In this document: positions 40,567-45,153 of the stretch, piece after piece
Position numbering within the stretch: the stretch's first letter is position 1
Layout of the letters: each line of letters opens with the position of its first letter
Source of the DNA: Magallana gigas
Taxonomy: Eukaryota
Assembly: GCF_963853765.1 (NCBI RefSeq)
Contig: NC_088855.1
Coordinates: 3,906,001-3,970,000 of the forward strand
DNA length: 64,000 nt
Reading direction: 5' to 3'
Position numbers and translations under genes: made by a program
Notes under the pieces: generated by a model
Told to the model about the DNA's origin: nothing
Databases searched by the model: none
What the model saw: only the letters and a program-made list of their open reading frames with translations

Positions 40567-42427
40567 ATGGCTGGCACTAGTTTCGCTTTGGTGTGTTGCG
40601 TTGTCGTGTTGCCTTCGGTAGCTGTAAGTACTGTCTTATCTAATCTTATAAACGATGACAGGATCTTTTTACTGTTTTTCTGAAAATAGTTCAAATTTGA
40701 AATATACTTTTTAAAATATAATTGATGGTAAAAAGTTTCTGAGTTTTAAATGTTCCAAGTGAAATCAATTTTAAGATTGTTGGTATTAATTTTCGAAAGG
40801 AGCATCATGAGAGAAATAAATAAAAAGCTAACTTTTTTTAAACAAAACAGCGATAACATTGGTTTTGGATTTATTTCAGGGTTATTGGTGGTCCAATCAG
40901 AACCAGAATCTGAATAACAATGTCAACGTAAACACAGGGTTCTACGACCCCCCTCCCGCCCCGGCGCCGGAACCCCCCGCACCCGCACCAAAGAAAGTAG
41001 TACACGCCACCAAAGACACCGTGGTCAGCATCAACTTCCACGCCCCCATCAAGAACAAGTTTATCCCCACCCTCAACATCGGAGGTTTCGGAGGCGGTCC
41101 CGCCCCCAAGGCCCCTTCAGCTTCACCCAAGAAGAAGAAGACTCCTAAATCCCCCAAGAAAGGAAAGAGGCCAGAACCTAAAAAGAAGACCGCTGCTCCA
41201 AAGAAGAAGTCCAAGGCCCCCAAATCAAAGGCCCCCAAGAGCTCCCCACCAAAGGGATCTCCACCCAAAGGTTCTCCACCTAAGGGATCCGGTGGCGCCG
41301 GACACGGTCTACCCATGAACCTTGTCTTCAACAACAACTTTCCCCAGAACATGATGAACGTTGTCGGAGCTCACAATAACGTCAGAGGCAAAGGCGTTCA
41401 CATGCCCAACAACAACGCTGGAGGAACCCAAAAGGTCAAACAGACCTACAAAGCCACAGGTGGAATTCAGACCCAGGGTGGATACCAGGGAGGACAGCAA
41501 GGAGGCCAGCAAGGGGGACCTCAGCAGGGTGGCGGACAAGGAGGGAGCCAGGGTGGATTTGGAAGGTGGGGTGGATCTCATTATTCCAACATCCACTCCG
41601 TCAAATACCCGAGCAATGACGTACAAGTCATCGGAAACGGAAACGAAGTCCACACAGTTGCCGGACTTTACAACAATGTCAAGTACCAGAAGAAAGTGGC
41701 TCCTCCGCCCATGCAGGGAATGCAGTTTAAACTTCTTCTGAACTTGCTCCAGAAGATGGTTGTTAAAGTGAATGCTCCACCAAAAACCACAACTACAACC
41801 ACAACAGAGCCTACAACAACAACCACTACCACTGAAGCTACCACAACTCCAGCAGAAACCACCACAACCACCGAGGCGACCACAACCACCACCACCACAG
41901 AGCCTACCACAACTACCACTGAAGCTACCACCACTACCACAGAGGCTACAACAACCACTACCACAGAGGCCCCAACCACTACATTCCCTTATAACCAAAT
42001 GTTGGAGATCCTGCTAGCACAGATGGCCTCTGGCTCCAACACACAGACACAGCAAGCCGCTGTTTTGGATATCATGGGACGAGGAGGTCAGAAAGCGGTC
42101 TCCATGAACGCCAACTCAGGATATGGTCAGCAGGCTACTCTGGACATCTTTGGTGCTGCCCAGCAAGCCCCAACAACCATGGGACCATACTTGGACCCAG
42201 TGGCTCAACTCGACCTCCTGGCTGCCGGTGGATCCATCTCTGGTGGCTCTTACGGCGGGTCTAGTTTTACCGCAGTCACACCGCCACCTGCTGGTGCCGG
42301 CGCCGCCGGATCAGCCGTGGATCTGACTTGGCTGAACAAGTACATGCCTCAACTGGCTCTCCACCAAAGGTCTCCAATCAAGGTCATCTCTGGTGGCAGT
42401 TACGGTAGCAGAAAGGCCGCCGTGTAG
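40567..42427 (+). CDS. Secreted low-complexity protein A (534 aa: signal peptide, Asn/Gln N-terminus, Lys/Pro/Ser block, Gly/Gln block, Thr-rich mucin-like block)
   Basis: join(40567-40623,40880-42427). Exon 1 encodes the hydrophobic signal peptide MAGTSFALVCCVVVLPSVA; GCT|gtaagt ... tatttcag|GGT is a phase 0 intron. AATAAA at 42560 and 42708. Paralogous to the gene at 43436-45153. Confidence 0.9.
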
Positions 42428-43392
42428 TGAGTGCATTAACTATCTGACTCTTATACCGGTATTGTTTTGCAATTTGTGTCTCAGTCAAACCACCTCTAAA
42501 TCTAATTTCTACGCATTTCTGCCGGAGCCTTGTATTTTATCAGTATTATCTTTGTGACCAATAAAGAACTTTTTCATACTTTCGATCAGACAGAGATGTA
42601 TGAAATCCGTCTTCTGGGACACGGTTGTGATCAACTGCAGGAATTTTGTGGTGTTCTTAATGTTATTTATTTCATCTGTGTTTTTATTGTCCTGTTGATC
42701 TTGTACAAATAAAGACTTTAGAGTTAAATGCTTTTACTTGTCATTAAAATATCATTGTTTAAATGAGGAGCCAATATGAGTGATAGAAAGAAAGAGAGAA
42801 ATAGAAAGGGGGTCATGACGATGCAAATGAACTCAAGCTTGATAATAATATTCATCTGATCGGTCGTCGTTAATGTCACAATGTTCACACGTTACCCACA
42901 ATCTTTTGTCATTAATTAAATCATTGATTAAAACAAATTACATGTTAAAGAAATATTTGTGGCATTTCTCGCCGGGGAAGTTTGGTTCTATCCAAAATGT
43001 CTGCAAAATTCCTCTAAATATGCAGAAACGTCTCAAAGGTTGAATTAACTCCAAGTATCGCCACTTCCACATGCACGTAATTTCTTTGATTAATCAATGA
43101 CTAATTAATGATCATAAAATTAATAATTTACTAATTAATCGGGACCAAGTGTGCCTTGGAACGAGGAAAACAAATTCGGTGAATTCTGTCAAAACGTTGC
43201 CCTTTCTTGTCAGGGGGAAATTGCAAAAGTGTCGATAAGAAGATTCTAATTAATTCTAATTACCATACAACTAATCACGTACAGGTAAAAGTGTCATTAC
43301 CATTTACCTGTCGACCCTCATCACTGATAAAATGTACAATAAATGAATAATTCTAATTGATTTTGTGGACCGGCCTACATGGAGGGTTTGTG

Positions 43393-43400
43393 TATATAAG
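43393..43400 (+). promoter_or_regulatory. TATA box of secreted paralogue B
   Basis: TATATAAG starting 43 nt upstream of the ATG at 43436 (same spacing as paralogue A). Confidence 0.7.
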
Positions 43401-43435
43401 AACTACAACCAGAAGACCCCGATCAGAACACAACC

Positions 43436-45153
43436 ATGGCCAGAAGCGAGTGGGTCCTCTGTCTGCTGGCTATTCTCCCGTTGATACAGGTAAACATCAA
43501 CGTTACTGTTCTGTAATCAGAAATCAGAAAGTTATTGATTTCTGTACATGATAGACTTCAGTATGCTTAGTTCACTTTTTGTATGCTTTCTTTTAATCAT
43601 CTTACTTTGACAATGTTTTCTTTCTTTTTCAGGGATGGTACCAGAACCAAAACTCCAATATCAACATCAACACAAATTCTCCGGATCCGTTTGTGTTTGT
43701 AAGCCATTCGAACATAGCCTCCAACCCCGGGACAAATGTTATCACCCACTCTCAGGGGGCACATGATTCGTTTGTCAATTTGAACTTCCATGCCCCAATC
43801 AGCAACCACTTCGCTCCTACCCTCACAATTGGAGGGGGAGGAGGCGGTCCAGCAAAAACACCATCAGCTCCCAAAACACCAAAAGCTCCCAAAAAGTCAC
43901 CAGCACCGAAAAAATCACCGAAGAAGATGAAGCGTCCCAAGAAAAAATCGCCTTCTCCACCGAAAGCTAAATACCACGCCCCAGCGACCACCCCTCCTCC
44001 AATTCCCACCACGCCACCGCAAAAGACACCAAAGAAAACACCCAAAAAAGCGCCAAAGAAGAAAAGTCCTAAAGGTTCTCCCAAAAAGTCTCCCTCTGGC
44101 AATCCACAGGGCGGACCTCCGTCGTATCCCCCCAAACGACCACAGGCTCATTACGTGAACATTAAATCTATCCAATACCCAAGTAACAAAGTGACCGTCA
44201 TTGGTAGCCAAAACGAAGTCCATACTGTGGCTGGATTACGCAATAATATCAAGTATCAGAAATCGGTACTGCCAGCACCAGCTCCTAACCCTAGCATGAA
44301 ACTCTTACTGAACCTTTTGCAGAAAATGATCATTAAAGTAAACAATAAACCTGCACCAACTACAACAACAACGACAACAACAACAACAACAGCTCCTGAT
44401 ACAACTACGACAACTGAAGCCACTACAACCACAACAACTGCCGCCACCACCACCACCACCACAGAGGCTACCACCACAACCACCACTCCTGAAATGACAA
44501 CTCCTACAACTACAACAACAACTACCCCGGCCAGCACGACCCCGCTACCGTTCCCAACCTACACTGTCCAGCCCATCGACCAGAAGGGCCTGCTAATGGA
44601 GGTGTTACTGCAACACATGATAGCTCAGCCTAGTTCCGGTGGAGCCACCTTGGACTACGTGGGTCAGAACGGTAACCATGTGTCACTTAACAGTGCCTCA
44701 GGGTCACAGGCAAGTAGTTTGGGATCTCCAAGTTCCTCATTGTTAGGTAGCCTGGGACTTTCGTCTCAACCATCTACTGGAGGTTCTTCACTGTTGAGTA
44801 GTCTTGGTCTTTCGTCTCAATCTGCAACTGGAGGTTCTCAAGCCAACACAAATCTGGGACAACAGTTAGGTTTGGGTGCAGGATTTGGAAACTCTGTTGC
44901 GCTTGATGTGTACGCAGCTGCTCTTGCAAAATCGACTACACCCAACCCATTACTTGACCCCTATCAACTGTCCGGGCTTCTCTCGGGACCAGCTAGCGGC
45001 GGCGCTGCCCAAGGAGCTCCGGCTGATCTCACCTGGCTACAAAACTACATCCCACAGTTAGCCCTGGCGAAGCACGGGAAAGTAGCAGTTGTAAATAAGT
45101 TGGCCAACAAAAGCAAAACGAAAGCATTCATCAGCAAGAAACTATCAGTTTAA
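43436..45153 (+). CDS. Secreted low-complexity protein B (524 aa; tandem paralogue of A)
   Basis: join(43436-43489,43633-45153). Exon 1 encodes MARSEWVLCLLAILPLIQ (ACCATGG context); CAG|gtaaac ... ctttttcag|GGA is phase 0. Shares the NFHAPI, YPSNxVxVIGxxNEVHTVAGLxNN, LLLNLLQKM and DLTWL..Y.PQLAL blocks with A. Confidence 0.9.

What the first reader, a model, noticed from the sequence alone, without database searches (positions are those of the whole stretch)
41579..44262. Conserved 38-aa core of repeated V-x-G-x-x-N-x-V strands: candidate amyloid or beta-solenoid assembly motif
Seen: A HYSNIHSVKYPSNDVQVIGNGNEVHTVAGLYNNVKYQK (41579-41692) versus B HYVNIKSIQYPSNKVTVIGSQNEVHTVAGLRNNIKYQK (44149-44262), 28/38 identical while the flanks have diverged. 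It holds two V-x-G-x-x-N-x-[VI] units 10 residues apart and a third N-x-V strand; A has another copy (VVGAHNNV). Knowledge: RHIM cores read (I/V)Q(I/V)G-x-x-N, HET-s-type repeats use similar strand-Gly-Asn ladders, and grass ice-binding proteins use xxNxVxG beta-roll repeats. Inference: a secreted functional-amyloid or beta-roll nucleus embedded in a disordered chain. The RHIM match is imperfect (QVIG/TVIG).
Basis: partly seen in the sequence, partly recalled or inferred. Interest (0 to 1): 0.75.

Follow-up and report, generated by a model that had tools for sequence, protein, structure and literature searches.

The report
Oyster-only secreted mucin-like protein core
The repeated 38-residue stretch is real: it is the island best kept between two neighbouring, expressed oyster genes for secreted, cysteine-free, mucin-like disordered proteins, and it is probably a small beta-strand 'sticker' that links chains, but nothing here shows that it forms amyloid or a beta-solenoid.

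Summary
Both 38-mers are at the stated coordinates and share 28 of 38 residues.

They lie in the large second exons of two tandem two-exon genes, A (40567-42427) and B (43436-45153). RNA contigs from several studies confirm both introns at the predicted sites.

Both proteins are secreted, free of cysteine once the signal peptide is removed, and strongly basic. They are built of blocks:
- an Asn-rich head
- a conserved NFHAPI box
- a Lys/Pro-rich block
- the core
- a Pro-rich linker
- a Leu-rich helix
- a Thr-rich mucin block
- a Gly/Ser/Ala/Gln-rich tail with a conserved end box

A third paralogue lies on another contig. All relatives found come from true oysters.

The core matches no Pfam family, solved structure or Atlas cluster. 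RHIM, HET-s and grass ice-binding motifs do not fit. AlphaFold2 gives only low-confidence hairpins plus a helix for the core, and disorder for the whole protein. The four-copy test gave no answer.

Best reading: a lineage-specific structural mucin-like protein whose short conserved islands mediate non-covalent association. The 38-mer would be a beta-hairpin module. Amyloid is neither supported nor excluded.

The parts
40524..40532 (+). TATA-like box of gene A
   Evidence: TATATAAAG lies about 20 bases upstream of the first base covered by an RNA contig, 40544.
40567..40623 (+). Gene A exon 1 coding part: a 19-residue signal peptide
   Evidence: It runs from an ATG to a GT donor, has a hydrophobic core and ends in S-V-A. 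The joint 40623 to 40880 is seen in contigs of three runs.
40624..40879 (+). Gene A intron (GT..AG, 256 bases)
   Evidence: read laying joint 'skips 256 GT..AG' in X1, X6 and X7.
40880..42427 (+). Gene A exon 2 coding part (515 codons plus stop); the 3' UTR runs to about 42675
   Evidence: Open frame; RNA contigs cover 40880-42672.
40913..40933 (+). A: Asn-rich head motif NNNVNVN near the mature N-terminus
   Evidence: The motif N-x-N-[VLI]-N-[VIAL]-N occurs once in A, once in B and four times in the third paralogue.
41012..41104 (+). A: conserved box 1 (NFHAPI...IGG)
   Evidence: Conserved in all three paralogues; dN 0.014 against the orthologue.
41105..41299 (+). A: Lys/Pro-rich basic block (net charge +22 in 65 residues)
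41300..41449 (+). A: conserved box 2 (NNNFPQNMMN..VVGAHNNV..PNNNAGG), absent from B
   Evidence: 64% identical to the third paralogue, E 5.5e-12. Weak likeness to the core over 18 columns (hhalign E 0.017, probability 2.7%).
41579..41692 (+). A: the 38-residue core of the finding
   Evidence: The residues invariant in all paralogues follow the pattern P-x-N-x-V-x3-G-x2-N-x-V-x-T-x-A-G-L-x-N.
41693..41773 (+). A: Pro-rich linker (41693-41725) and conserved Leu-rich amphipathic helix (41726-41773)
   Evidence: BLASTP island; helix predicted in both AlphaFold2 models; coordinates checked.
41774..41995 (+). A: Thr-rich mucin-like block (48 Thr in 74 residues)
   Evidence: This stretch accounts for the weak, below-cut-off Pfam New_glue match.
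42320..42361 (+). A: conserved C-terminal box (DLTWL..Y.PQLAL)
43393..43400 (+). TATA-like box of gene B
   Evidence: TATATAAG lies about 40 bases upstream of the ATG.
43436..43489 (+). Gene B exon 1 coding part: an 18-residue signal peptide
   Evidence: The joint 43486 to 43630, which fits equally with the cut 3 places further right, is seen in X1.
43490..43632 (+). Gene B intron (GT..AG, 143 bases)
43633..45153 (+). Gene B exon 2 coding part (506 codons plus stop); the transcript runs to about 45281
43765..43857 (+). B: conserved box 1
44149..44262 (+). B: the 38-residue core of the finding
44263..44343 (+). B: Pro-rich linker and conserved Leu-rich helix
44344..44592 (+). B: Thr-rich mucin-like block
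45025..45066 (+). B: conserved C-terminal box

Best explanation
Genes A and B are tandem paralogues. With a third gene on another contig, they form a family seen only in true oysters. Each encodes a secreted, strongly basic, intrinsically disordered, mucin-like block protein whose mature chain has no cysteine. The 38-mer is the island best conserved between paralogues. It consists of three 9-10-residue pseudo-repeats of the form N-x-V-(x)3-4-G-x-x. I read these as short beta-strands joined by Gly/Asn turns, that is, a hairpin meander. A Pro-rich linker and an amphipathic Leu-rich helix follow. Inferred mechanism: the chain lacks the disulphide-forming domains that polymerise classical mucins. 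The short conserved islands (Asn-rich head, box 1, box 2, core plus helix, C-terminal box) would therefore act as non-covalent 'stickers', pairing strand-to-strand or helix-to-helix with other copies or with a partner. The Lys/Pro block would bind polyanions, and the O-glycosylated Thr block would hold water and act as a spacer. Together they would give a gel, film or matrix. Shown: gene structure, expression, secretion signal, composition, conservation, and the lack of any known domain. Inferred: strand and turn assignment, self-association, and the material role.
For: Gene models and splicing. Stranded polyA reads fit RNA from the + strand. Family and colinear boxes. The A-B tandem pair is kept in Saccostrea (fused model P0020) and in another oyster (L007). 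All relatives found are oysters, and the profile search of 1.84 billion representatives adds no other family member. Constraint is at protein level with synonymous sites saturated: core dN is 0.076-0.088 against 0.20-0.27 in the tails. The residues invariant in all paralogues are turn formers (N, G, P) and beta formers (V, T, A, L). The motif count far exceeds shuffles. AlphaFold2 on the 78-residue fragment places strands at residues 13-32 and a helix at 54-71. The whole protein is predicted disordered apart from short helices. No cysteine, net charge +29, +35 and +60 for A, B and the third paralogue.
Against: No experiment or prediction here shows any association. The four-copy prediction gave no verdict. 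Both AlphaFold2 models are low in confidence (pLDDT 49.6 and 32.3), from alignments of only 7 and 9 sequences, so the hairpin reading is weak. Tissue and stage of expression are unknown because run names are coded, so the material role is a guess. Between A orthologues the core is not the best-kept island.
Confidence: 0.5

Rival explanations
1. The core is a cross-beta nucleus: chains stack in register with Asn ladders and Gly arcs, as a functional amyloid or an inter-chain beta-solenoid, and this hardens the secreted material.
For: The Asn and Gly positions are invariant at a 9-10-residue period and flank short V/I/T strands. A further Asn/Val-alternating motif (NNNVNVN) sits at the mature N-terminus and is repeated four times in the third paralogue. 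The protein is secreted, disordered and cysteine-free, as several marine adhesive proteins reviewed as amyloid-like are said to be (PMC12472103, abstract only).
Against: The RHIM tetrad is absent, and no Pfam model of RHIM or HET-s matches at E up to 10. A 9-10-residue unit with only 2-3 copies cannot close a solenoid rung within one chain (from my own knowledge, HET-s uses 21 residues and the RTX roll 18). The monomer model gives antiparallel hairpins. The four-copy run scored 0.01, which the tool states is no evidence either way. The two residues inside the G-x-x-N turn vary freely (NG, SG, SQ, HQ, NK).
Confidence: 0.12
2. The core, linker and helix (about 66 residues) fold into a small autonomous alpha/beta domain that binds a specific ligand, such as chitin, another polysaccharide, a mineral face or a partner protein. 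It would be a binding domain, not a self-association module.
For: The strands are amphipathic and are followed by a conserved hydrophobic helix that could cover one sheet face. Tyr, His and Asn are conserved, as is common at sugar-binding sites (own knowledge). Short, non-significant likenesses to hairpins of globular folds were seen: an HMA-domain protein at E 1.1 and repeats that I read as fibronectin-type-III-like in P0017.
Against: The linker length is not kept: the third paralogue carries a much longer, Gly/Gln-rich stretch between core and helix. AlphaFold2 confidence is low. There is no match in Pfam, the PDB sequences or the ESM Atlas.
Confidence: 0.25
3. The core is a worn remnant of a fibronectin-type-III or Ig-like beta-sandwich (strands C to F, with a T-x-x-G-L...Y-x-x-x-V 'tyrosine corner') and has no independent role.
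For: The profile hit P0017 (E 6.9e-10) aligns G-N-E-V..T-[IV]-[SA]-G-L..N-V-x-Y-Q to the core.
Against: The score is summed over 7 repeats of about 28 columns each. No Pfam model, fn3 included, hits any core sequence at E up to 10. There is no sequence for strands A, B and G. Strong purifying selection argues against a functionless remnant.
Confidence: 0.04
4. The island is kept for a reason other than structure, for example as a sorting, processing or modification signal recognised by a secretory-pathway enzyme.
For: It is a short conserved island in an otherwise fast-evolving chain.
Against: There is no N-glycosylation sequon and no dibasic site within the 30 residues that end at the invariant A-G-L-x-N (read directly). 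The invariant residues are those typical of strands and turns.
Confidence: 0.07

Closest known systems
Gel-forming and secreted mucins (the automatic NCBI name of the Saccostrea orthologues is 'mucin-5AC-like')
   Same: Signal peptide, a long Thr-rich block likely to be O-glycosylated, an extracellular structural role.
   Different: There are no VWD, C8, TIL or cystine-knot domains and no cysteine at all in the mature chain. The 'mucin-5AC-like' name reflects composition only.
RHIM cross-beta motifs (RIPK1/RIPK3, ZBP1, TRIF)
   Same: A short V/I-rich strand followed by Gly and Asn. The wording V-Q-V-I-G is close to the tetrad.
   Different: The tetrad (I/V)-Q-(I/V/L/C)-G is not present, because a residue is inserted before G, and B has T in place of Q. 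RHIM proteins are cytosolic signalling adaptors; this protein is secreted. No Pfam match.
HET-s prion-forming domain and grass (Lolium) ice-binding beta-roll
   Same: Asn and Gly recur at a fixed period between short beta-strands.
   Different: The period here is 9-10 residues with 2-3 copies. From my own knowledge, HET-s has 21-residue rungs and Lolium has 14-15-residue coils in about 8 copies. The ice-binding motif N-x-V-x-G does not fit (here N-x-V-x-V-x-G and N-x-V-x-x-V-x-G). No family match.
Cysteine-poor, low-complexity marine adhesive and cement proteins, such as the barnacle cement proteins reviewed as amyloid-like or silk-like (PMC12472103, PMC5099703)
   Same: Secreted block-like low-complexity chains with short beta-prone segments and basic blocks. 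This is the closest analogy for how it may work.
   Different: No sequence homology was found. No evidence places the oyster proteins in an adhesive. In the literature search, the review PMC12472103 held no occurrence of 'oyster'.
Drosophila glue proteins (Pfam New_glue, PF21827)
   Same: A hydrophobic helix followed by a Thr-rich run.
   Different: E 0.011 and 15.8 bits against a cut-off of 31 bits, covering only the helix and Thr block. This is a composition effect, not membership.

Membership tests
RHIM | Core tetrad (I/V)-Q-(I/V/L/C)-G | tested here: not met
   A reads V-Q-V-I-G and B reads V-T-V-I-G. No register gives the tetrad.
RHIM | Match to the Pfam RHIM model | tested here: not met
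   No Pfam family at E up to 10 for any of the 7 core sequences.
RHIM | Cytosolic signalling protein | tested here: not met
   There is a signal-peptide exon and the protein is secreted and mucin-like.
HET-s-type beta-solenoid prion domain | Two pseudo-repeats of about 21 residues, each forming one solenoid rung | tested here: not met
   The repeat period is 9-10 residues. No Pfam match. The rung length is from my own knowledge.
Grass ice-binding beta-roll | Many tandem 14-15-residue coils carrying x-x-N-x-V-x-G | tested here: not met
   There are only 2-3 units, the spacing is N-x-V-x-V-x-G or N-x-V-x-x-V-x-G, and the period is 10.
Functional amyloid (generic) | Cross-beta fibrils (ThT binding, 4.7 A reflection, fibrils by EM) | not testable with these tools
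   This needs peptide or native material. The in-silico four-copy test gave no verdict.
Gel-forming mucins | Cys-rich VWD/C8/TIL and cystine-knot domains for disulphide polymerisation | tested here: not met
   The mature chains have no Cys and there is no Pfam domain.
Gel-forming mucins | Long Pro/Thr/Ser-rich block for O-glycosylation | tested here: met
   48 Thr in 74 residues in A, and a similar block in B. Glycosylation itself was not tested.
Fibronectin type III | Seven-strand sandwich of about 90 residues that matches the Pfam fn3 model | tested here: not met
   No Pfam hit. The only likeness is about 28 columns to repeats in P0017.
Oyster A/B/C family (this report) | Colinear boxes: Asn head, NFHAPI box, Lys/Pro block, core, Leu-rich helix, C-terminal box, in a signal-peptide exon plus one large exon | tested here: met
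   for A, B, the third paralogue and the orthologues. The signal-peptide exon of the third paralogue was not located; only a candidate acceptor site and an open frame upstream of its ATG were seen.

The most novel reading that the evidence does not exclude
True oysters evolved a cysteine-free way of building an extracellular gel or cement. Mucin-like chains would be locked together by a conserved Asn-ladder cross-beta module (the 38-mer, helped by the NNNVNVN head motif). That would make it a secreted metazoan functional amyloid with a new sequence signature, unrelated to RHIM or HET-s.
Probability: 0.12. Interest if true: 0.7.

Novelty: new variant of a known kind. Interest (0 to 1): 0.4.

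Why it matters
If the islands do link chains, the family shows how a mucin-like material can be assembled without disulphides. That bears on oyster mucus, shell-matrix or cement biology and on wet biomaterials design. It also defines a small oyster-restricted gene family, now mis-named 'mucin-5AC-like' and in one genome mis-modelled as a single fused gene. The family has clear conserved modules, and peptide biophysics and tissue proteomics can test them directly. As it stands, it is an uncharacterised lineage-specific secreted protein, not a demonstrated amyloid.

Tried and rejected
- **Four-copy complex of the 78-residue core.** Score 0.01, and the tool's verdict is 'no answer', so it counts neither for nor against self-association.
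- **AlphaFold2 of the core and of the whole protein.** Confidence was too low to justify a fold search, so none was run.
- **ESM Atlas, on the core and on the full length.** No usable hit.
- **PDB sequence search with the core profile.** Only E above 1.
- **Pfam on the full proteins and the cores.** Nothing above cut-off.
- **Literature.** Six tryptic-type peptides of protein A are printed in no held paper. Searches on composition terms and on 'mucin-5AC-like' with oyster terms gave nothing that could be tied to these genes.
- **Box 2 and the core as internal duplicates.** hhalign aligns 18 columns at E 0.017 and probability 2.7%. This is suggestive only, so I do not claim it.
- **The 1049-residue ORF at 49751-52900 (-) as a relative.** BLASTP found no significant similarity.
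- **Weak genomic matches L004 and L005 (E 1.4 and 3.3).** I took these as chance.
- **Encoding contig for P0003.** Not on record.
- **Tissue of expression.** It could not be learned, because run, sample and study names are coded.
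Full report
**1. The observation**

The two stretches translate exactly as quoted. They share 28 of 38 residues and 78 of 114 bases. Synonymous sites between them are saturated. The likeness is therefore kept by selection on the protein and does not come from recent gene conversion.

The motif [VI]-x-G-x-x-N-x-[VI] occurs three times in A and twice in B. 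Shuffles of the same proteins give means of 0.03 and 0.013 copies.

Two corrections are needed:
- BLASTP of the two open frames shows a conserved island of 66 residues (67% identity, E 2e-24). It comprises the 38-mer, a variable Pro-rich linker and a Leu-rich helix.
- There are further conserved islands, so the statement that the flanks have diverged is only half true.

**2. What the genes are**

The window has the composition of an animal genome, at about 31-45% G+C. Its neighbours are a rhodopsin-type receptor gene and a TRAF/MATH gene.

Each stretch lies in a long open frame that begins at a splice acceptor. Upstream of each is a TATA-like box and a short exon that encodes only a signal peptide:

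| Gene | Exon 1 (signal peptide) | Intron | Exon 2 (coding) | Precursor |
|---|---|---|---|---|
| A | 40567-40623 | 40624-40879 | 40880-42427 | 534 residues |
| B | 43436-43489 | 43490-43632 | 43633-45153 | 524 residues |

RNA evidence supports both models:
- RNA-library contigs hold about 0.8 of the sampled words of a stretch that includes the A intron; the best holders without a stated kind, which I take to be DNA runs, hold 1.0.
- The laid contigs show both introns removed at the predicted GT..AG sites.
- The transcripts span about 40544-42675 (A) and 43438-45281 (B).
- Stranded polyA reads lie in the orientation expected for RNA from the + strand.

Both genes are therefore real, expressed and spliced.

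**3. Anatomy of the proteins**

The mature chains have no cysteine and are rich in Thr, Gly, Pro, Ala, Lys, Asn and Gln. Net charge is +29 for A, +35 for B and +60 for the third paralogue.

The eight-sequence alignment gives this order of blocks:
1. G-W-W/Y and an Asn-rich head (NNNVNVN type)
2. Box 1 (NFHAPI...IGG)
3. A Lys/Pro block (+22 in 65 residues in A)
4. Box 2, in A only
5. A Gly/Gln block, in A only
6. The 38-mer core
7. A Pro-rich linker
8. A Leu-rich helix
9. A Thr-rich block (48 Thr in 74 residues in A)
10. A second short helix
11. A Gly/Ser/Ala/Gln tail
12. The box DLTWL..Y.PQLAL and a basic end

**4. The family**

A search of the window's own genome with the core finds A, B and one weak match on another contig (E 0.06). 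That match proves to be a true third paralogue:
- It is an exon of at least 1380 residues with the same boxes in the same order.
- Against A, box 2 scores E 5.5e-12, the core 5e-05 and box 1 1.4e-04.
- It carries four copies of the Asn-rich head motif.

All relatives found in the large protein collections come from oysters:
- Four A-type proteins and the Saccostrea B-type protein named 'mucin-5AC-like' were found.
- A Saccostrea echinata model of 1022 residues is simply A and B fused by the annotator.
- A contig from another oyster run (L007) also carries A and B in tandem.

The duplication is thus older than the split of these oyster lineages.

A profile of the core was read against 1.84 billion representatives. 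It returned the family itself and three unrelated proteins whose scores are sums over 5-10 short repeats.

Limits on 'oysters only': the word search sees only proteins of 0.55-1.75 times the query length, and the representative library did not return the B-type or third-paralogue sequences. 'Oysters only' is therefore the best current statement, not a proof.

**5. Constraint**

Against the L007 orthologues, synonymous sites are saturated (dS above 1.3) while dN is low throughout:

| Region | dN, A | dN, B |
|---|---|---|
| Whole protein | 0.12 | 0.20 |
| Core | 0.076 | 0.088 |
| Tail | 0.20 | 0.27 |
| Box 1 | 0.014 | 0.183 |
| Box 2 | 0.039 | absent from B |

The core is therefore the island best kept between paralogues (dN 0.225 against 0.574 overall), but not within the A lineage.

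**6. Is it a known domain?**

No, on every test run:
- Pfam gives nothing for any core sequence at E up to 10.
- Pfam gives nothing above cut-off for the whole proteins. The New_glue match at 15.8 bits against a cut-off of 31 covers the helix and the Thr run.
- PDB sequences give only E above 1.
- The ESM Atlas gives nothing usable.

**7. Is it an amyloid or solenoid nucleus?**

The named analogies fail on their defining features:
- **RHIM.** The tetrad is not present. V-Q-V-I-G has an extra residue before G, and B has T for Q. The protein is extracellular.
- **HET-s and the grass ice-binding roll.** These use rungs of 21 and 14-15 residues in longer series (own knowledge). Here the period is 9-10 residues with two or three units. 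That is too short for a closed rung within one chain.

The residues invariant in all three paralogues follow the pattern P-x-N-x-V-x3-G-x2-N-x-V-x-T-x-A-G-L-x-N. These are turn formers and beta formers at a 9-10-residue period. The simplest reading is a meander of short strands joined by Gly/Asn turns.

The structure predictions add little:
- AlphaFold2 on the 78-residue fragment agrees in kind (strands at 13-32, helix at 54-71), but at pLDDT 49.6 from a seven-sequence alignment.
- On the whole protein it predicts disorder with five short helices (pLDDT 32).
- A four-copy prediction scored 0.01, which the tool says is no evidence either way.

Inter-chain in-register stacking remains possible, but nothing positive supports it.

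**8. Mechanism proposed**

*Shown:* a secreted, expressed, conserved, cysteine-free, basic, largely disordered mucin-like chain with short conserved islands.

*Inferred:* classical mucins polymerise through Cys-rich domains that are absent here. The conserved islands are therefore the likely association sites ('stickers'), and the low-complexity blocks are spacers with bulk properties:
- polyanion binding by the Lys/Pro block
- hydration by the glycosylated Thr block
- possible Gln/Lys enzymatic cross-linking

I give this 0.5. The rivals are a small ligand-binding alpha/beta domain (0.25), a true cross-beta nucleus (0.12), a non-structural signal (0.07) and a fibronectin-type-III remnant (0.04).

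**9. Novelty and verdict**

The kind of protein is known: a secreted, low-complexity, mucin-like matrix protein restricted to one lineage. The conserved modules and the cysteine-free design are undescribed as far as these searches reach. The peptides are printed in no held paper, and the one review of amyloid-like marine adhesives held no occurrence of 'oyster' in the literature search.

I class it as a new variant of a known kind, with moderate interest. I confirm the receptor and TRAF neighbours. The third protein of that note, at 49751-52900 (-), is not homologous to A or B.

Noticed in passing
L006:4824-8966 (+) = G000:C1, about 37.999-38.003 Mb: Third paralogue of the family. It is one exon of at least 1380 residues, very Gly/Gln/His-rich, with net charge +60, four copies of the NNNVN-type head motif and all the family boxes. 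A candidate splice acceptor lies just upstream of the open frame.
   Followed up: partly
window 49751-52900 (-): A 1049-residue open frame rich in Pro, Gln, Ser, Thr and Asn. It has no Pfam domain and no significant similarity to A, B or the third paralogue.
   Followed up: partly
window 47843-48433 (+): Open frame with a strongly acidic Asp/Glu/Asn-rich tail and no Pfam match. It lies between the basic proteins A and B and the long ORF. Whether it is a gene or a partner was not tested.
   Followed up: no
window 46337-47473 (-): Open frame for a rhodopsin-family receptor with no intron inside it (7tm_1, E 4e-21). It lies directly downstream of gene B on the opposite strand.
   Followed up: partly
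window 55684-56283 (-): Exon encoding a TRAF/meprin MATH domain (E 9e-44).
   Followed up: partly
window about 29960-30830 (+): A run of N (a gap or masked stretch, left untouched) is followed by a long tandem DNA repeat that reads open in three frames as a Cys/Val/Leu-rich repeating peptide. It is probably a satellite and not coding sequence.
   Followed up: no
P0020 (Saccostrea echinata 'mucin-5AC-like', 1022 aa): This public gene model fuses the A and B orthologues into one protein. The second signal peptide sits in the middle of the model.
   Followed up: yes
window 43490-43640 and 42489: In run X7, a contig has 12 letters where the reference has the first bases of exon 2 of B. The net gain is 6 bases, in frame, within the Asn/Gln-rich head. 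In run X6, a contig lacks 3 bases in the 3' UTR of A. Both look like allelic length variants.
   Followed up: no
P0017 (1958 aa, unknown eukaryote): Its repeated domain, which I read as fibronectin-type-III-like, carries G-N-E-V-I-G-T-I-S-G-L-S-G-N-V-Q-Y-Q-V. This is strikingly close to the second half of the core. I judge it a chance or convergent strand-turn-strand pattern.
   Followed up: partly
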